Of a stretch of DNA of 64,000 nucleotides, positions 52,479 to 64,000 are shown piece by piece (position 1 is the stretch's first letter; the number at the start of each line of letters is the position of its first letter). The notes below the pieces were generated by a model, which did not search any database, had not been told where the DNA came from, and saw only the letters and a program-made list of their open reading frames with translations. Both the position numbers and the translations under genes were made by a program. This DNA is from Ostrea edulis (lineage: Eukaryota), in NCBI RefSeq assembly GCF_947568905.1, contig NC_079172.1:64294001-64358000 (forward strand), given 5' to 3'.

Positions 52479-53720
52479 TTTGGCCGGGTTGCACGAAGTG
52501 CAAATCCGGTCTATAGTATGGTAAAGTGCGGGCGGGCGGGCGGGGAAATTTTGTGAAATCAACTCCTCCTACAGTTTTTTATGTACAACCTTGAAACTTT
52601 GCAGAAAGTAAGTATATATATTGAAGTTATGCACTAGGTTTTTTGAAGTCCGACCTTTGTCGAATATGGGCGCTACAGCAAAAATTTGTTACTAAAAATA
52701 GAGTTCAACTTGAAAAAGGTAAGTGAGATTATCTTTTGTGGTTAAATTTATTCTATGTTTTAATCGTTTTGATAATTATACCCCCCGCAACAAGTTGTGG
52801 GTGGGGGGGGGGGGTATACTGGAATCAGGTTGTCCGTCTGTCCGTCCGTCCGTCTGTAGACGCAATGGTTTCCGGGCTCTAAAGCATTATCCTTTCCACC
52901 TACCATCACCATATCATACATATGGACTACCCATGGGATGAAGATGTTCCCTATCGATTTTGGGGTCAAAAGGTCAAAGGTCAAGCGCACTGGACATTGA
53001 AGTAGCAATATGGTTTCCGGGCTCTAAAGCGTTATCTTTTCCACCTACAGTCACCATATCATACATATGGACTACCCATGGGATGAAGATGTTCCCTATC
53101 GATTTTGGGGTCAAAAGGTCAAAGGTCAAGTGCACTGGACATTGAAGTAGCAATATGGTTTCCGGGCTCTAAAGCGTTATCCTTTCCACCTACAGTCACC
53201 ATATCATACATATGGACTACCCATGGGATGAAGATGTTCCCTATCGATTTTGGGGTCAAAAGGTCAAAGGTCAAGTGCACTGGACATTGAAGTAGCAATA
53301 TGGTTTCCGGGCTCTAAAGCGTTATCCTTTCCACCTACAGTCACCATATCATACATATGGACTACCCATGGGATGAATTTGTTCCCTATTGATTTTGGGG
53401 TCAAAAGGTCAAAGGTCACGCGCACTGGACATCGAAGTAGCAATATGGTTCGGTTTGTCATGCCATTTGTTTTTTACACTCAGAAAAGAGGTAGTTTATA
53501 CCTATTACCAACACCCTTTGGGAGATTGGGGTAAGCGGGGGGTATTCTTAGTGAGCATTGCTCACAGTACCTCTTGTTTACTTTACAATTCTGCCTCCTC
53601 CAACACTAAGGCCATAACAAATCATAACAGTCCTCCAGATAACTACCACCAAATAAATCCCTACCCAAATTATTTACTCTAAATATTGCAACCCGGCCAA
53701 TTGAGTCTTTGACCCATTTT
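52479..53720 (+). mobile_element. Outer HINE-like element hosting a second HINE
   Basis: 13-bp subterminal IR tggccgggttgca (52481) / tgcaacccggcca (53687), 5' hairpin, (GCGG)4 microsatellite, 3' hairpin tgagtc-ttt-gaccca, and T-rich ends. Confidence 0.7.
52776..53578 (+). mobile_element. Helentron-associated HINE with four near-identical 145-bp tandem repeats
   Basis: subTIR ataccccccgc / gcggggggtat, (GTCC)n, units starting at about 52863, 53007, 53152 and 53297 plus a partial unit, and the 3' palindrome gtgagc-att-gctcac. Confidence 0.88.
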
Positions 53721-55389: not shown

Positions 55390-55959
55390 CTTATGTCTAT
55401 TCATGTTTTATGGGTCACTGTTTCCAGATACATGAGTTTCCTCAATGGAATGCTTTGAATTTGTTTAATTTCATCAATTTTATAGGAGATGCACTAGAAT
55501 TACTTTCCCAATTTCATACACTTTTTCATAAAAATCCCAAACAAAAAGTCACAGGCCTGTTTCAAAAAAGTCTTATTAATCCCTGTGTAATTGTCAAGAA
55601 AGGTTGCTGGTAATGGATATTGTAATGCATAGTTGGTTAAAGTTTGTCACGAAATCTGCATAATTCTGTGAAATTCCATGATGCCTGCTTAGACGGAAAA
55701 TCATTTTTAAATTGCTACATGTAGATTGTATTTTGCATGCGTGTCCTTTTCATTTCTGAGATTTCGTTCATGTTGCCGTAAGCATTTATATTTATTGAAC
55801 TCCATCCTAATCAAAATTACGCCTTTGTATACTTTGCTAATTAAAGTGAAAAGTACTAGTGAAGGTATCAAAGCTTGAATTAATTGTGTATCAACATTCT
55901 GCAGGAGGTAAATACTTCTATATATCCGTATAGTGGTTGACCCATAGTCTGTTGAACTT

Positions 55960-57420
55960 CATAGTTTGTGGGTCACTGTCATCTATACATGTATGTGTCT
56001 GTTCATGGATTGTGGGTCACTGTTATAGGTTGTTTGTTCTAACATTTTTCCTGTAGTTTGTTCATGGCTTTTTTTGTGTCTTTGTTTTTATACATTTGTG
56101 TATTTACATATATCGTCAACTTCCCACATTTATGTAGCAATATTCCATTATCACCTGCATATGGTGTTTATATATCTCAACTGCTTCGATATGCAAGAGC
56201 TTGTTCTCGGTATAGTCAGTATTTAAATCGAGGTAAGCTACTGACAAACAAGTTGATGGTACAGGGATTTCAACAGTCTCGATTGAAGTCAGCATTTCGC
56301 AAATTCTATGGTCGTTATAACGATCTAGTTCGTCAATACAACCTCGCATTGGGTCAAATGCTGTCTGACGTGTTTCATACCGATTGTTAAGCCGATCTTG
56401 GCACACTGATTTGACTGCGGATAACTCCGTTTACCTGATCAGGATATGGGGCTCACGGCGGGTGTGACCGGTCAACAGGGGATGCTTACTCCTCCTAGGC
56501 ACCTGATCCCACCTCTGGCGTGTCCAGGGGTCCGTGTTTGCCCAACTATCTATTTTGTATTGCTTGTAGGAGTTATGAGATTGATCACTGTTCGTTATCT
56601 TCACCTTGCATATGTGAATGCTAATAGTTTGTGGGTCACTGTCATATATACATGTATGTGTCTGTTCATGGATTGTGGGTCGATCACTGTCATAGATTGT
56701 TTGTTCTAACATTTTTCCTGCAGTTTGTTCATGGCATTTTTATGTCTTTGAGTTTAGACATTTGTGTATATGCGTACATATGTGAATGCTAATAGTTTTT
56801 GGGTCACTGTCATATATACATGTATGTGGCTGTTCATGGATTGTGGGTCACTGTCATAGACTGTTTGATCAAATATTTTTCCTGTAGTTTGTTCATGGCA
56901 TTTTTATGTCTTTGAGTTTAGAAATTTGTGTATATGCATACATATATATGTGAATGTTCATGGTTTTTGGATTACTGTCATATATAAATGTATGTGTCTT
57001 TTCATGGATTGTGGGTCACTATCATAGATTGTTTATTCTAATATAGTAGAAGTCCTATTATGGCAGTTCAGTTATACATGTGTTTATGGTTTGTTGATCA
57101 CCAGGTAACCCTCATGTTCATAGACTGTGGGACATTGTTTTAAGATTTTATTGTATTCAGATGTGTCCGATTATTGTTTTTGGATCAGTATAAGTATAAA
57201 TATATGATATGGATATTTGTCTGTTTGTGTTTTTTGGTCACTGTTGTAAGATACTAGATTGTGAATACAATTATGTGTGTTTGTTTATGGTTTGTCAGTC
57301 ATTATGTTTACATATATAAGTCTGTTTATTGTTTGCTGGTCACTGTTTGAAATACATGTGATGACCTAAGTATATATGGGTGTTCATGGTTTGTGAATCA
57401 CTTTGTCAGAATATATGAAT
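55960..57420. repeat. Degenerate tandem repeat of about 168 bp, built from about 40-bp gtgggtcactgtcata subunits
   Basis: Units start near 55962, 56625, 56793 and 56961, then decay to about 57420. Confidence 0.8.
56112..56607 (+). mobile_element. 5'-truncated Penelope-like retroelement 3' fragment inserted in the satellite
   Basis: VNFPHLCSNIPLSPAYGVYISQLLRYARACS..LTNKL..QGF resembles the post-RT region of Penelope-like elements and is followed by a 3' UTR. The satellite resumes after 56607. Confidence 0.65.
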
Positions 57421-58547
57421 GTATAAATTTCATCATTTTCTTAAATACCATGAAGGATGTTTGTATGTAACTTATACACAGTGGCATTCTTGCAGAAACT
57501 CGTTGATCAATCATGCTTAAGTTTGATGACCTTAACCTTCCACCTTTACTCATGTTACACTCTTATTGTTGTTGTAAAAAGAACTACATCCTAATGGCTA
57601 AATACTAGTGGCTAATTGCTAAATGGTTGTAACTGTCTGACACTTACAGTTATATATTATGTCACAAAATTGGTCAGTTTGTGAGAGCATGTGGAAATGA
57701 ACTTTTCTATACCAAGGTAAACAGTTTAGAGTTCCTTATTGATATGGTCTTTCTGAGAACTGTTAGATTAACCTTTTTTTACAACGTCGACCGCCGCAGA
57801 GCAGCACATGATAATCCACGAATGGTTTGGTGAATATTGATTTCGTGTGTGTTCCATCAAAAATATTTAATTAGAGATGCGATTGAAATTTTAAGACCGG
57901 ACATGTGCCAGGCAGTATGTACAATTTTGAAAGGAAAATTTGTTGAGATATGAAACGTTATGCAGTGTAACATCTCGTTCGAAACAAGACAAAGGAGATG
58001 CGTTTTTATATCTTATGGATTCTTCCAAAATTTATTCAAATTATCAACAAATGAGAACTCCTAGGACCAAAAAAAAAAAAACCCCAAAAAACCATGATAA
58101 TAATAATTTAATGATATTTTAGAAAGCGCAGCGAGACATCACATAAATTTTATATTTAGCCTGCCACCTTTTTGCTCTAGTGGATGACAACAATGACTAA
58201 TATATTTTTACATCATAGAGGGCGAAGTAAATATTGAATTTTTCTTTATAAAAATGTGTATATTCATTTTTCATTTAATTTCCATTGCTATTTAATTAAG
58301 CTATGTTGTGTGTAATTTTTAAAAATAAAATTAATTTGCTCCAACACCTTAACATGAAATATGTGCCCTCAAATACCCCAAAATCCCACTGAAAATGAGA
58401 GAAAATTGTTTCAATTTTGTGCAGAAACACAACCACTGTTGGATTGTTCTTACATTGAAAAATGTGTATCGTATCTACTAGAATAACATATCAAAAAATT
58501 AGAGATGTCATATTTCATTTAAGAAAATAAATTGATTTTAAAATTTG

Positions 58548-59268
58548 TGTTATGCCCCATACTATGGTAATTTGGTAATTTTCCATTTTTATCTGTTCAG
58601 GAGTTATTGTTCTTTTCAATTATTGCAAAGTTTTATTTAGAGTTATCTCCCTTTAACGTACATTGCAGCCATCTTGTGTTTTTCAACATCTCTATAATTT
58701 GTGGCCTACTACAATGTAAGTAGCTATGCATTATATTTGTGCATTTGTAGAATTGTTTTTTACAATATTTAAATGTTAGTTTCATTGAGATATTTTATAT
58801 AACTTTAAATTTAACAGAAATTTCTACGGCACGTGTCTTGGGTAGATATTGTAGTCCCTATGAGCTGGAACAATTTATTTTAGGCTTTGTGCAGTTAATT
58901 TATAGTAATGTTTGCAATCCATGTGAATTATATATGTAGTTAATGGCATATTTCTTGCAATTTTGTTGATAAGTATTTATATAAAGTAAACCCCTATTTG
59001 TCAGAAAAAGTTATGGAAAGCACTTGGTGTCATTATGTATTTTTCTTGAATTTTTCTAATGTATGGTGTGCTATTATAGATATTATTCCAAAATGTAATT
59101 TCATTCTTTGTACTTTTACAGCCTTTTACCACACTCACACACACATCTACTCAGCCTCATCTTCATGTATTATGGAATACATTACTGGGAGAAATACATA
59201 TTCAGAATTTGTATTGGAGTAACTGTGTACTTAGTGAATGGTTATACTACTGCCTCCGGGGCAGAACA
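58548..59268 (+). repeat. Probable 5' LTR of the BEL/Pao element (about 720 bp)
   Basis: TGTTAT...AGAACA termini (5/6 inverted match), located 37 bp before the gag ATG. The second LTR is outside the window, so the boundaries are unverified. Confidence 0.55.
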
Positions 59269-59305
59269 GTAAAAGGATTACAACTGGCCTGACAAACACA
59301 ACACA

Positions 59306-62300
59306 ATGGATCCAAATCTATTGGAAAACAAAAACATGGAGGATTCATCAGGAGATGTGAGACCTCAGCGGAATATAAAATTGACGGATAAAGGTCAAGA
59401 ACATTTTGAAGACCTCAGCAAATCGCACCAAGCTCGGATTGCGAAGGCATGGAACACATTGGACATTTGTTTAAAAAGCATTGATAAAACGCGTGAAGAA
59501 ATGGAAGAATTACTCGCTTTGCATACAGAAATTAAAAAACTTGGGACTGAATTAGAAACACAATGCTCGGACTATTTACAATTCCTAAACCGGCATAATT
59601 CTGACAATGAACTGGAACTTTTCAACAGAACTTTGAGAGGGTACCGTTTGATGGTGGACACTTCTTTGAGGAAACTCACACTGAAAATTGAAGATCTGAA
59701 ATTCAGAGAAAATGCTTCAAGATCTTCTAAGCCAACTATATCGTCACACAATCTAAGTCAGTCATCAGCAGTATTAAGAAAGCGGGCCAAGGCAGAAGCC
59801 CTGAAGGCTTCCCTTAAATTTGCGGAGGACCAAGCTCTACTGCAGAAGAGACAGGTAGAACTGACACTACGACATGCAATTACAGACAAGGAAAATGCTG
59901 AACTAACTGCTGAAATGAATTTACTGAGCATTAAACGTGAAGCATTAGAGTTAGAAGTTGAAGCACAAGTCTTGGAAAACGATGAAAGCCGTTCCATTAA
60001 ATCAGTGTTGGAAAACTTAGAAACTGAAAATTCTCAAAAAAGAACAAGTGCATATGTTCAGAACATTTCATCAACTTGTAATGAAACTCAACCAGTGACA
60101 GTGTCTCAAAATCAACCAACTGTTGAACAACAAAATGAATCAGAAACTCCACAGCCATTGGAAGTTACATCATCATCACCCCATCCAGCTGTGACCATGA
60201 CAACTTCATAACCTTTTATATATGAAGCACCATTTATGTCGTCACAACCTTGTATATCTACAGCTCCACTCATGTCAAGGTCACAGTCCCAAACCTACAG
60301 AGTCCCATTTGTGCCAACATCACAAAATCAAATGTATGGAACTTAATCAGTGTCAAGAACTCAGCAGTTTCCAGTGGAACTTACAAAGTTTATCTTAAAG
60401 AAAGACTTGCTTTTGTCTCGATTGACAACATTTAATGACAAGCCTGAGTTTTACCCAACTTGGAAAAATTCTTTCAAGGCAATCATGCATGAACTTGAGG
60501 CGGAAATAGACCTACTTATCAAATGGACTGGACCGTTATCACAACGTCACATTATGAGCATTAATGCCGCCAACATGAACAATCCTGAGCACGCATTACG
60601 TCGAAGTTGGATTCGTCTGGATGAACGTTTCGGCTGTCCAGAAATGATCGAGTCAGCCCTGAAGACTAAATTAGACTCTTTTCAAACATTAACCACAAAA
60701 GACCTTCATCGGTTGTATGATCTTTCGGACATTCTGGATGAGATAGAAGCCATTTAGGAGGACTCGCGCTATTCCTGTCTACTTTCGTATTTTGACAGTT
60801 CCTCAGGAGTGACACCGATCGTCAAGAAACTTCCAAGTTATATTCAAGGAAAGTGGACTAATGAAGTAGTGGCCTACATGACTATGAATTAAGTGTCATA
60901 TCCGCCTTTCAGGGTTTTCGCAAGATTCATCCGGGGGCAAGCAAAGATCAGGAATAATCCTTCTTTTGCTTATGACAACAAAACAGACACACTGAGAAGG
61001 AAGCCAGAGAAAGTGTCCACGAAGAAAACAGACTGTGTGCAGATGGGCGATGTTTCAGTTAGAAAGTGTCCACTTCATGGGACACATCATTCCTTGAATA
61101 AATGCAGAGCATTCAGACATAAGTCATTGGATGAAAGGAGGAAATTTCTGAAAGAGAAAAATATATGCTTCAAATGTTGTGATTCTCATTCTCATAAGCG
61201 AAGAGACTGTACTGCTCAAGTGAAATGCGAGGACTGTGATAGCACAAATCACCCATCAGCTCTACATGTTTTTGTTCGTAACACAAGAAATCATGGTGGG
61301 GAGATGCGAAATGATGGAAGACGCAATGACGGGGAGACACAGCATAACAGTGTAGGCTCCATGTGCACACAGATTTGTGGAGGACAATTTAATGGGAAAT
61401 CTTGCTCTAAGACTTTGTTGGTGAAAGTATTTCCAACGGAAGACCCTCGACAAGCCATAACTATGTATGCTGTCATAGACGATCAGTCGAATCGTTCTTT
61501 GGTCAGTCCTATATTTTTTGACCTGTTCAGGTTACAAGCTGACTCAACAGTTTACACACTCTCATCATGTGGAGGCACAATTCGTACTACTGGAAGAAAA
61601 GCCAGTGGATTTGTGGTGGAATCATTGGACGGTAGCTGTTCCCTTGATCTCCCGACACTTATAGAGTGTGAAAACGTACCCAATGTGAGAGAGGAGATTC
61701 CGACTCCAGACGTGGCTCAACATTACAGTCATTTGAGGAATATATCTAGCTTCATCCCTTCATTAGACCCAAAAGCTGAAATACTATTGTTGCTTGGTAG
61801 AGATATAGTAGAAGCACATCATGTTGTAGATCAACGAATTGGTGGAAGAAATCAACCGTATGGACAGAAATTACGCTTGGGTTGGACAATTATTGGAGAA
61901 ACCTGTCTTGGCAAGACTCATGTACCAAGATCAATCAATATGTACAAAACTCATATCCTGGGATCTGGTCGTGCGTCAATGATGCCACCTTGCACCAACG
62001 AATTCAAGATTAGAGAAGAAATCAATCACGTCCCATATGGTGTGAACTCAACAGATGCTTTAACTTGTGAGAGCGATAATTTCGGCAAGGATGTTTTCCG
62101 AAGAACCAAAGACGATGAGAAACCTGGGTTGTCAGTTGATGATTACCAGTTTCTTAACATTATGGATGATGGTTTTCAAAGAGATGCAAATGGTAATTGG
62201 ATCGCTCCACTCCCATTTCGCCATCCGCGACCACGACTCCCTAATAACAGAAGTGTTGCATTGAGACGAGCAAAGTTGCTGGAAGCTTCACTAAGAAGAA

Positions 62301-64000
62301 ACCCTTTGAAACAAGAACATTTTCTCACCTTTATGGAGGGCATTCTGAGAAATGGACATGCTGAGTTAGCACCACAATTGTCACATGATGAGGAATGCTG
62401 GTTCTTACCGATATTTGGTGTGTATCACCCAAAGAAACCAGATCAAGTGCGAGGAGTCTTTGATTCATCAGCGAAACACGAAGGATTCTCACTCAATGAT
62501 GTCTTGTTATCGGGTCCTGATCTCACAAACAGCCTTCTTGGAGTTCTAATGCGTTTTCGGAGGGAACCTGTTGCAGTGATGGCAGATGTACAGCAGATGT
62601 TTTACTGCTTTAAAGTGAACGAAAATCATCGCAATTTTCTACGATTTTTCTGGTTCAAAGACAATAATCCTAACAACCCAATGGTTGAATACAGGATGAC
62701 CGTCCATGTATTTGGCAATCGGCCATCGCCGGCAGTAGGGACTTACGGGATTCGTAGAACAGCACTGAATGCGAAAACAGAATTTGGACAAGACGTTAGA
62801 GATTTTGTGATGGACAATTTCTATGTAGACGATGGACTTATGTCGCTACCTACGGCATCCGAATCTACAAGTTTGATAAGGCGAACACAGAAAGCTTTAC
62901 TGGTTGAAGGCAATATGCGGCTGCATAAGATTTCTTCGAACAGCGAGGAAGTTTTGGGTTCGTTTCCAACAGAAGATCTTGCCAAAGATATGAAAGATCT
63001 AGAGTTCGGGAAGGACCTGCTCCCAATGCAACGGAGTCTTGGTCTTAATTGGAATTTGGATGATGACATTTTTTTCTTTGAGGTGACGTCAAAGAATACA
63101 GCATGCTCTAGAAGAGGAATTCTTTCCTGTGTGAATAGTATATTTGATCCCCTGGGATTCCTTGCACCTGTTGTCATAGAGGGAAAGAATATTTTGAGGA
63201 CTCTTGTTCAAAGCACTATTGACTGGGATACGCCACTCTCATTAGACCAAATAGAAGTTTGGGAGCGTTGGAAAAACCCTTTAGTTCATTTGGGAAATTT
63301 GAAGATTCCTCGGACATATGCACCTATGTCTTTGGAAAACTGTGTTCACAGATCAGTCCACGTTTTTTGTGATGCCTCAGAAATGACCATTGCTGCAGTT
63401 GGTTACATCAAAATGGCGTCTCACAACAATGATCAAGTAGGATTTGTTCTAGAAAAATCGAAACTCGCTCCAACGCATGGACACTTAATTCCAAGACTGG
63501 AGCTATGTGCGGCAATATTGGCAGTAGAAGTTGGTTGTTCTATAGCAGATCACTTATTGTTACCTATCGAGGAGTTCAACTTCTATTCTGACAGTAAAGT
63601 AGTGTTAGAGTATATTTTCAACACTACACGCCGATTCTATACATATGTCACAAATCGTGTCTCATTCATCCGGAAGATGACAAAACCGAAACAGTGGAAA
63701 ATCGTATCCACCGAATATAACCCTGCTGATCAAGCTACCCGTGCACTACCATCTCATCAACTGAAAGACAGTGCATGGTTGAATGGACCTCCTCATCTCG
63801 CTAAGCATGATCAGAAAGATGTTCGAGAATTTACCATGGTGGACCCTGATGCAGACAAGGAAGTGAGAACAACTGTGACTTGCTTCAAGAGTAACACTAA
63901 CACAAAGACATTAGGATCTCATTACTTCCCAAAGTTTTCGACTTGGAAAAGTCTTGTGAGAACATTTGTGCTGCTCAGACACATTGCAAAGTCTATTGCT
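59306..64000 (+). pseudogene. BEL/Pao gag-pol polyprotein (Gag, Cys/His knuckles, protease, RT, RNase H), running off the window
   Basis: One frame with in-frame stops at about 60211, 60347, 60757 and 60893, then open to 64000: CPLHG..HSL..C, CFKCC..H...C, YAVIDDQSNRS, VFDSSA, DVQQMF, FYVDDG, FCDAS, PRLELCAA and NPADQATR. Confidence 0.93.

What the first reader, a model, noticed from the sequence alone, without database searches (positions are those of the whole stretch)
59069..59280. BEL/Pao element may self-prime: no tRNA PBS, and the post-LTR sequence pairs with its own LTR
Seen: the inferred LTR end (AACA, 59268) is followed by GTAAAAGG rather than TGG. The LTR contains CCTTTTAC (59122-59129, 8/8 complement) and CTTTTAC (59113-59119, 7/7). 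In both, pairing stops exactly at the LTR boundary, which is the geometry a primer 3'-OH would need. A TATA-like TATAGATA (59075) lies 28 nt before an Inr-like TCATTC (59101), which would place these motifs in the first 30 nt of the RNA. Known: Tf1/sushi chromoviruses self-prime this way. I do not know of this being described for BEL/Pao. An 8-bp match in AT-rich DNA can arise by chance, and ttttacag also resembles a splice acceptor.
Basis: partly seen in the sequence, partly recalled or inferred. Interest (0 to 1): 0.72.

Follow-up and report, generated by a model that had tools for sequence, protein, structure and literature searches.

The report
Self-priming signature in BEL/Pao retrotransposons
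This oyster BEL/Pao retrotransposon, and 15 relatives from molluscs, ticks, fishes and a priapulid, have no tRNA primer site; instead the bases just after the LTR pair with a co-varying motif inside the LTR, which suggests they start reverse transcription with their own RNA, something reference texts do not describe for this family.

Summary
The LTR ends at 59268 (…AACA). It is followed by GTAAAAGG, not TGG, and CCTTTTAC lies at 59122-59129. One correction: the LTR is 721 bp (58548-59268), not about 200 bp. The element runs from 58548 to 66290 and has a 5-bp target duplication, ATTTG. An empty-site contig confirms these ends.

Five further BEL/Pao families in this genome (probably Ostrea edulis) and ten elements from other species all carry an exact 6-13 nt complement of their own first post-LTR bases. 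It lies 65-158 nt before the LTR end.

- In 16 of 16 elements the pairing begins exactly at the LTR boundary.
- The mean match is 8.2 nt at that offset and about 3.6 nt at other offsets.
- Both sides change together: GG/CC, AG/CT, GA/TC, GT/AC, AA/TT, GTAAGAAAA/TTTTCTTAC, GTGAAAC/GTTTCAC, and 13 nt in Ixodes.
- No element has TGG directly after the LTR.

The best reading is Tf1-like self-priming, at about 0.75. The transcription start, the RNase H cut and the priming itself are inferred, because no usable RNA data were available.

The ICTV profile describes the family as tRNA-primed.

The parts
58543..58547 (+). Target-site duplication ATTTG, 5' copy. The 3' copy follows the 3' LTR at window-equivalent 66291-66295, outside the window.
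   Evidence: The empty-site contig in runs X1/X2 continues from 58547 straight into the sequence that flanks the 3' LTR.
58548..59268 (+). 5' LTR, 721 bp, TGT...ACA ends. The 3' LTR lies at window-equivalent 65559-66290 and is 96.9% identical, with a 12-bp indel.
   Evidence: BLAST of the 5' region against the 3' region of L024; alignment A1; solo LTRs end at the same base.
59075..59082 (+). It lies 45 nt before the CAG at 59119-59121. Its function was not tested.
   Evidence: sequence only.
59113..59119 (+). Upstream partial copy of the motif (CTTTTAC, then AG). It matches the primer-binding site 7/7 here, but only 6 nt in sister families B and C, so it does not co-vary.
59119..59121 (+). CAG directly before the motif, preceded by a T-rich run. 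YAG is conserved at this position in 12 of the 16 elements (TCAGT in families E and F). It is the candidate initiator and transcription start. This is inferred.
   Evidence: No RNA evidence.
59122..59129 (+). Proposed self-primer CCTTTTAC. It is the exact complement of 59269-59276, and its 3' C pairs with the first base after the LTR.
   Evidence: shuffle p = 0.006; covariation in 16 elements; conserved in 15 of the 18 other family-A LTR copies that span it, with 2 substituted and 1 deleted.
59250..59264 (+). Predicted U5 hairpin (CUGCCU/GGGCAG), 4 nt before the LTR end and next to the primer helix. It recalls the U5-IR stem of Tf1 and retroviruses. Support is weak.
   Evidence: Similar short stems occur in about 10 of 16 relatives, but few are individually significant.
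59269..59276 (+). Primer-binding site GTAAAAGG, directly after U5. There is no TGG. A TGG at 59285 is not conserved even within the family (TGA in copy L050).
59306..60211 (+). gag-like ORF of 301 aa. Relatives have one continuous reading frame of about 2000 aa. In this copy it is split into at least three pieces (59306-60211, 60350-60757, 60893 onward).
60893..64000 (+). pol ORF with the Pao reverse-transcriptase region (Peptidase_A17). It continues past the window end to window-equivalent 65104. The polypurine tract AGGCAGGGAG lies at 65549-65558, outside the window.
   Evidence: Pfam PF05380, E = 3.5e-39.

Best explanation
The element is a degenerate copy of a BEL/Pao (Belpaoviridae) LTR retrotransposon. 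Its lineage most likely primes minus-strand DNA synthesis with its own RNA, as Tf1 does, rather than with a tRNA.

Proposed steps:
1. Transcription starts in the LTR at or just before the motif, near the conserved CAG at 59119-59121 (inferred).
2. The 5'-proximal CCUUUUAC (59122-59129) folds back onto GUAAAAGG (59269-59276), which lies directly after U5, and closes an R-U5 loop of about 140 nt. The complementarity, its exact position and its covariation are shown. The fold is predicted.
3. The element's RNase H cuts after the last C of the motif and frees a 3'-OH opposite the first post-LTR base (inferred from Tf1).
4. Reverse transcriptase extends this end through U5 and R to make strong-stop DNA (inferred).
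5. Plus-strand synthesis later copies the RNA primer back into the primer-binding site. This keeps the two sequences matched and would explain the perfect co-variation (inferred).
For: LTR end and insertion boundaries are verified.

The five further BEL/Pao families in the same genome have gag only 25-44% identical to this one. Their LTR ends were each confirmed by 3'/solo LTR matches. Ten elements from Pecten, Mytilus, Patella, Haliotis, Ixodes, Dermacentor, Pungitius, Rhinichthys, Corythoichthys and Priapulus were added. Each of the 16 carries an exact complement of its own first 6-13 post-LTR bases, 65-158 nt before the LTR end.

The complement begins exactly at the LTR boundary in 16/16. 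Mean length is 8.2 nt at offset 0 and about 3.6 nt at offsets from -20 to +20.

Compensatory changes occur at positions 3, 5, 7 and 8, plus the 11- and 13-nt extensions in ticks. Permuting primer-binding sites among elements reached the observed pairing 0 times in 100,000.

On a protein tree, sister pairs differ in both sequences together (A/B, E/F, Ixodes/Dermacentor), with at least 10 state changes.

The motif sits after a T-rich run plus CAG in 12 of 16. AATAAA follows it within about 10-70 nt in most of the elements examined, as expected for the start of R.

The helix is part of the minimum-energy fold of the putative R-U5-PBS RNA in 10 of 16 elements. For this element the pairing probability is 0.91.

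No element has TGG directly after the LTR. Rfam finds nothing significant in 58500-59400 (one DicF match at E = 0.69, far below its gathering score) and ARAGORN finds no tRNA gene in the window.
Against: There is no RNA evidence. The transcription start is unknown, because only assembled contigs were available.

The duplex is short and A/U-rich. It is 8 bp here and only 6 bp in two fish elements; in Rhinichthys a further 4 bp follow a 2-nt mismatch. Tf1 uses 11 bp.

The first six bases, GTAAAA, are almost invariant across phyla. This could reflect a shared host factor or an enzyme preference rather than pairing alone.

In 6 of 16 elements the helix is not in the predicted minimum-energy fold.

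Nothing shows that a BEL/Pao RNase H can cut an RNA:RNA duplex.

This copy has a broken reading frame, and no AATAAA lies between its motif and the LTR end, so the inference is about the family and not about present activity.
Confidence: 0.75

Rival explanations
1. The motif and the post-LTR bases form a conserved long-range RNA stem with another role, such as packaging, dimerisation, translation control or presenting the initiation site. The real primer would be a different, unidentified RNA.
For: The pairing and covariation show only that the helix is selected, not that it primes. Retroviral leaders contain such stems around the primer-binding site.
Against: The helix ends exactly at the U5 boundary in 16/16. 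That boundary is set by where the primer's 3'-OH sits. No alternative primer site is conserved nearby: there is no TGG, and the leader sequence beyond position 8-10 is unrelated between families.
Confidence: 0.12
2. A host RNA with an unusual 3' end (...UUUUAC), such as a tRNA fragment or another small RNA, is the primer. This would explain the near-invariant GTAAAA.
For: GTAAAA is shared by 14 of the 16 elements from four phyla. Internal tRNA fragments prime copia and Ty5 (my own knowledge). The ICTV profile says the family is tRNA-primed.
Against: Bases 7-13 differ between families living in the same genome. Each time they match that family's own LTR motif. One host RNA cannot do this. Pungitius (GTGAAAC) and oyster family E (GTAAGAAAA) change even the core, and their motifs change with it.
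Confidence: 0.06
3. The two motifs are splice signals: a donor at ACA|GTAAR and an acceptor at T-rich CAG|. Their complementarity would then be a by-product, because the motif resembles the U1 snRNA 5' end.
For: Twelve of 16 elements have a T-rich tract plus YAG directly before the motif. GTAAG and GTAAA are donor-like. Family D reads TTACCTG, as U1 does.
Against: The tick elements lack the YAG context but have the longest complements, 11 and 13 nt. Splice signals do not explain why exon bases after an acceptor should co-vary with intron bases after a donor. An acceptor upstream of the donor in the same LTR has no evident use in an element with a single gag-pol frame. No splice joint appeared in the contigs, though this is weak evidence.
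Confidence: 0.05
4. The complementarity is a chance match in AT-rich DNA.
For: For this element alone p is about 0.006. For single relatives it is 0.01-0.17.
Against: The match recurs at the same place and in the same register in 16 of 16 elements whose LTRs otherwise cannot be aligned, and it shows compensatory changes.
Confidence: 0.01

Closest known systems
Tf1, Tf2 and Tj1 of fission yeasts and the Tf1/sushi group (Ty3/gypsy chromoviruses, Metaviridae): self-primed reverse transcription
   Same: There is no tRNA site. The bases directly after U5 are complementary to a segment near the 5' end of the element's own LTR transcript. A hairpin in U5 may sit beside the duplex. PMC4600332 describes the mechanism and says it is implicated in elements 'from fungi to vertebrates', citing work on Tf1 and on the vertebrate Tf1/sushi group.
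   Different: This is another family (Belpaoviridae: Pao reverse transcriptase PF05380). The duplex is 6-13 bp, usually 8, against 11 in Tf1 (my own knowledge). It has a nearly fixed GTAAAA/UUUUAC core across phyla. The RNA 5' end and the RNase H cut are experimentally shown for Tf1 and only inferred here.
Canonical BEL/Pao elements as described by ICTV and for Achilles (olive fruit fly)
   Same: Same superfamily, with gag-pol in one frame, TG...CA LTRs, a 4-6 bp target duplication and a polypurine tract.
   Different: These are described as primed by a host tRNA. The ICTV profile gives an 18-nt site for tRNA-Arg or tRNA-Gly (PMC8742986). Achilles has a tRNA-Tyr site (PMC4580426). The lineage studied here has no such site.
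copia and Ty5: priming by an internal fragment of initiator tRNA-Met
   Same: The primer-binding site does not begin with TGG.
   Different: In those elements the site matches a host tRNA and is the same across families (my own knowledge). Here it follows each family's own LTR.
Retroviral U5-IR and U5-leader stems
   Same: Short stems in U5 next to the primer-binding site; a comparable hairpin is predicted at 59250-59264.
   Different: In retroviruses these stems assist a tRNA primer. Here the support for the hairpin is weak.

Membership tests
BEL/Pao (Belpaoviridae) | Pol with the Pao-type reverse-transcriptase region (Pfam Peptidase_A17, PF05380) | tested here: met
   E = 3.5e-39 on the pol ORF. 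The nearest proteins carry PF05380 plus DUF5641. The N-terminal ORFs of oyster families B-F match such polyproteins.
BEL/Pao (Belpaoviridae) | LTRs with TG...CA ends, a short target duplication and a polypurine tract before the 3' LTR | tested here: met
   721/732-bp LTRs with TGT...ACA ends, ATTTG duplication, AGGCAGGGAG tract, and an empty site.
BEL/Pao clade (Sinbad/Sparrow/Surcouf, Suzu, Tas and others) | Placement in a reverse-transcriptase tree with reference elements | not tested
   No reference sequences were available. Mollusc BEL/Pao elements are mostly Sparrow or Sinbad according to PMC6238403.
tRNA-primed LTR retroelement | Site complementary to a tRNA 3' end (begins TGG) within a few bases of the LTR | tested here: not met
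   The post-LTR bases are GTAAAAGGATTACAAC. None of the 16 elements has TGG directly after the LTR. The TGG at 59285 is not conserved in copy L050. The full tRNA set of the genome could not be compared.
Tf1-type self-primed elements (mechanism) | Bases directly after U5 are complementary to a segment of the element's own LTR downstream of the promoter | tested here: met
   8/8 here; 6-13 nt in 16/16 elements, in exact register with the LTR boundary.
Tf1-type self-primed elements (mechanism) | The two segments co-vary between families | tested here: met
   Pair table and permutation test; sister pairs on the tree.
Tf1-type self-primed elements (mechanism) | The complementary segment is the extreme 5' end of the mRNA | not testable with these tools
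   No RNA runs with raw reads were available. The context (T-rich run plus CAG before the motif, AATAAA after it) is consistent with this but is only an inference.
Tf1-type self-primed elements (mechanism) | RNase H cuts the RNA duplex to create the primer, which stays attached to strong-stop DNA | not testable with these tools
   This needs biochemistry.
Tf1/sushi group (phylogenetic membership) | Ty3/gypsy chromovirus pol | tested here: not met
   The pol is Pao-type. The element may work like Tf1 but is not a member of that group.

The most novel reading that the evidence does not exclude
A whole, ancient lineage of BEL/Pao retroelements in molluscs, ticks, teleost fishes and a priapulid replicates by self-priming from the 5' end of its own RNA. 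It uses a shared UUUUAC-3' primer core. This would contradict the current family description (tRNA-primed) and would be a second origin, or an ancestral retention, of self-priming outside the Tf1/sushi group.
Probability: 0.7. Interest if true: 0.85.

Novelty: new variant of a known kind. Interest (0 to 1): 0.8.

Why it matters
Self-primed reverse transcription is known only from the Tf1/sushi branch of Ty3/gypsy elements. BEL/Pao replication is called 'poorly understood' and is assumed to be tRNA-primed (ICTV profile).

If this reading holds, it would have four consequences:
- It would change the description of Belpaoviridae.
- It would bear on the debate over whether hairpin or self-priming preceded tRNA priming in LTR elements (PMC3601003).
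- It would explain why tRNA-based primer-site finders such as LTRdigest cannot find a tRNA-type site in these elements, so that structural annotation may miss them or grade them incomplete.
- It would mean these elements escape host defences that act through tRNA-derived fragments aimed at primer-binding sites.

It also gives a simple sequence rule for annotation in this lineage: ...ACA|GTAAAA, plus a matching motif 65-160 nt upstream.

Tried and rejected
**RNA evidence for the transcription start.** The look-up of sequencing runs returned only Logan contigs, none recorded as RNA. Read laying showed no molecule starts and no joints at the motifs. Its only useful result was the empty site at 58547.

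**A Logan contig carrying the family-B polyprotein (L088).** It proved to be a collapsed LTR + internal + 30-nt overlap contig, so it does not show transcript ends.

**Fetching 40 full-length relatives from the genome.** I used the 3-4-kb loci already held, and confirmed LTR ends by DNA searches that returned no sequence.

**The formal pair-count tool.** MAFFT put 3 of 16 sequences out of register at the 5' motif (A2). I therefore made the pair counts in a script with fixed registers.

**A conserved U5 hairpin.** It is suggestive, but few elements are individually significant.

**'GT' after solo LTRs.** I suspected a signal, but the flanks are simply diverse.

**Leptodactylus look-up.** It returned no DNA. 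The Priapulus gene model has gaps, and its LTR end is ambiguous by one base.

**Old Tf1 papers** (PMC230564, PMC109269) are not held.

Full report
**What is there.** The window is G000:C9:64294001-64358000. Contig C9 is 75,578,129 bp long. An Ostrea edulis protein among the homologues is recorded on a contig of that same length, so the genome is very probably the flat oyster. This is an inference.

Comparing the 5' region with sequence fetched beyond the window (L024) shows a direct repeat of 721/732 bp that is 96.9% identical. The 5' LTR is 58548-59268 and the 3' LTR is at window-equivalent 65559-66290.

The ends read TGT...ACA. The 5-bp duplication ATTTG flanks the 7743-bp element, and AGGCAGGGAG precedes the 3' LTR. 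Sixteen other LTR copies in the genome end at the same ...GCAGAACA and have unrelated flanks. A contig in two public runs passes from 58547 straight into the sequence beyond the 3' LTR, which is an empty site.

The pol ORF carries the Pao reverse-transcriptase domain, E = 3.5e-39. In this copy the polyprotein frame is split into at least three ORFs. Relatives have a single frame of about 2000 aa.

A search of the same genome with the gag protein found many related families. In five of them, with gag only 25-44% identical to ours, the loci returned included the 5' LTR-leader junction. All have ...CAGnACA|GTAA... at the junction. For each of the five, DNA searches showed 3' and solo LTR copies ending exactly at that ACA. 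Their N-terminal ORFs match BEL/Pao polyproteins that carry PF05380 and DUF5641.

Each family's LTR contains the exact complement of its own first 8-9 post-LTR bases:

| Family | Post-LTR bases | LTR motif | Distance before LTR end |
|---|---|---|---|
| Ours (A) | GTAAAAGG | CCTTTTAC | 139 nt |
| B | GTAAAAAG | CTTTTTAC | 80 nt |
| C | GTAAAAAG | CTTTTTAC | 77 nt |
| D | GTAAAAAG | CTTTTTAC | 65 nt |
| E | GTAAGAAAA | TTTTCTTAC | 90 nt |
| F | GTAAAAGA | TCTTTTAC | 95 nt |

**Other species.** Homologues 52-69% identical in the reverse-transcriptase region occur in bivalves, gastropods, ticks, fishes, frogs and Priapulus. I fetched ten full elements and defined their LTRs by self-comparison:

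| Species | Post-LTR bases | LTR motif |
|---|---|---|
| Pecten | GTAAAAGT | ACTTTTAC |
| Patella | GTAAAAAG | CTTTTTAC |
| Mytilus | GTAAAAAA | TTTTTTAC |
| Haliotis | GTAAAAGG | CCTTTTAC |
| Priapulus | (A)GTAAAAGA | TCTTTTAC(T) |
| Pungitius | GTGAAAC | GTTTCAC |
| Ixodes | GTAAAAGACGGTG | CACCGTCTTTTAC (13 nt) |
| Dermacentor | GTAAAAAAGTG | CACTTTTTTAC (11 nt) |
| Rhinichthys | GTAAAA | TTTTAC |
| Corythoichthys | GTAAAA | TTTTAC |

In Rhinichthys a further 4 bp follow a 2-nt mismatch.

**Statistics.**
- Shuffles give p = 0.006 for this element and below 0.001 for the two tick elements.
- When the anchor is slid from -20 to +20, the longest complement averages 8.2 nt at offset 0 and about 3.6 nt elsewhere. 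It starts exactly at the boundary defined by LTR comparison in 16 of 16.
- Position by position, pairs 1-6 are Watson-Crick in 16/16. Position 3 is C-G once, position 5 is C-G once, position 7 is C-G/T-A/G-C in 6/7/1 elements, and position 8 is C-G/T-A/A-T in 6/6/1.
- Each primer-binding site matches its own motif better than the others' motifs (8.25 against 5.7 nt). None of 100,000 permutations reached the observed total.
- On a maximum-likelihood tree of the N-terminal polyprotein (15 rows; Priapulus left out because its gene model is broken; family A represented by the open frame of copy L049), sister pairs differ in both sequences together, and the pairing state changes at least 10 times. 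The rest of the LTRs cannot be aligned.

**Context.**
- In 12 of 16 elements the motif directly follows a T-rich run plus YAG (TCAGT in families E and F).
- In molluscs it is followed by CCA.
- AATAAA follows within about 10-70 nt in most of the elements examined; this copy has none.

This is what the start of R should look like, and it suggests the RNA begins at or just before the motif. That remains an inference.

Folding the putative R-U5-PBS RNA places the helix in the minimum-energy structure in 10 of 16 elements. For this element the pairing probability is 0.91, with a hairpin at 59250-59264 beside the helix. In the 901 bases searched around the LTR, Rfam gives only one insignificant match (DicF, E = 0.69, 17 bits against a gathering score of 48). 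ARAGORN finds no tRNA gene in the window.

**Interpretation.** The right edge of an LTR is set by where the minus-strand primer's 3'-OH sits. A co-varying helix that ends on that edge in every family is therefore the signature of a primer, not merely of a structure. The simplest mechanism is Tf1-like:
1. The RNA's own 5' segment anneals to the site after U5.
2. RNase H frees its 3' end.
3. Reverse transcriptase extends it.
4. Copying the primer back during plus-strand synthesis keeps the two sequences matched.

The rivals are scored in their own section: a structural stem with an unknown primer, a host RNA ending in UUUUAC, splice-signal look-alikes, and chance. The tick elements count against the splice reading, because they lack the CAG context yet have the longest complements. 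Family-specific bases count against a host primer.

**What is known.** Self-priming is documented for Tf1, Tf2 and Tj1 and is implicated in relatives 'from fungi to vertebrates'; the work cited covers Tf1 and the vertebrate Tf1/sushi group (PMC4600332). [quoted passage not shown] The BEL/Pao element Achilles has a tRNA-Tyr site (PMC4580426).

The main BEL/Pao surveys do not mention primer-binding sites at all: de la Chaux and Wagner 2011, Copeland 2005, and Thomas-Bulle 2018. Full-text searches combining self-priming with Pao/BEL terms found no paper that links them. Subscription papers, such as Frame et al. 2001 on Suzu, could not be read, so an earlier mention cannot be excluded. The scan's own notes hold nothing on this.

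**Limits.**
- No transcription start, cleavage or priming data exist.
- The duplex is short.
- Two fish elements pair over only 6 nt.
- The BEL/Pao clade was not determined.
- Other clades were not sampled.
- The window copy itself is degenerate.

Noticed in passing
G000 loci L055 (C7:82863xxx), L070 (C7:2708xxx), L074 (C2:86426xxx) and their paralogues: Sister BEL/Pao families B, E and F have several copies with 100% identical LTR segments and open frames of 2000-2051 aa. This suggests very recent activity in this oyster genome.
   Followed up: partly
window 58547, runs X1/X2 (organism A): A contig crosses the insertion site without the element. The insertion is therefore polymorphic or absent in a close relative.
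   Followed up: partly
window 59250-59264 and the equivalent U5 ends of relatives: A short stem pairs the conserved LTR terminus G(R)CAG(N)A with an upstream T(N)CTG(Y)C, often inside a conserved TAAACTGGYTG box. The arms vary together in some families (CTGCC/GGCAG, GCTGC/GCAGC, TTCTGTCA/TGACAGAA). It resembles a U5-IR stem but is mostly not significant per element.
   Followed up: partly
L049, L020 and L021 (G000:C1:89532xxx): This family-A copy has an inverted LTR fragment abutting the last ~29 bases of U5 (…GATACTACTGCCTCCGGGGCAGAATA, then the PBS), which is a rearranged 5' LTR. It still keeps an 800-aa open frame.
   Followed up: no
window 58774 (5' LTR) compared with the 3' LTR: A 12-bp indel (GTTGTTCCCATC) distinguishes the two LTRs. 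Other genomic copies and public contigs carry the longer form.
   Followed up: no
window 52865-53589 and 55939-57044: Two tandem-repeat arrays lie upstream of the element, with periods of 145 bp and about 164-168 bp.
   Followed up: no
tree: Fish and tick elements form one well-supported clade, separate from the mollusc elements. This could reflect an old lineage split or horizontal transfer.
   Followed up: no
PBS positions 9-10 in B, C, F, Pecten and Haliotis: The two bases after the 8-bp duplex are AC in these five families (GTAAAANNAC), opposite the AG of CAG. These are conserved mismatches whose meaning is unknown.
   Followed up: no
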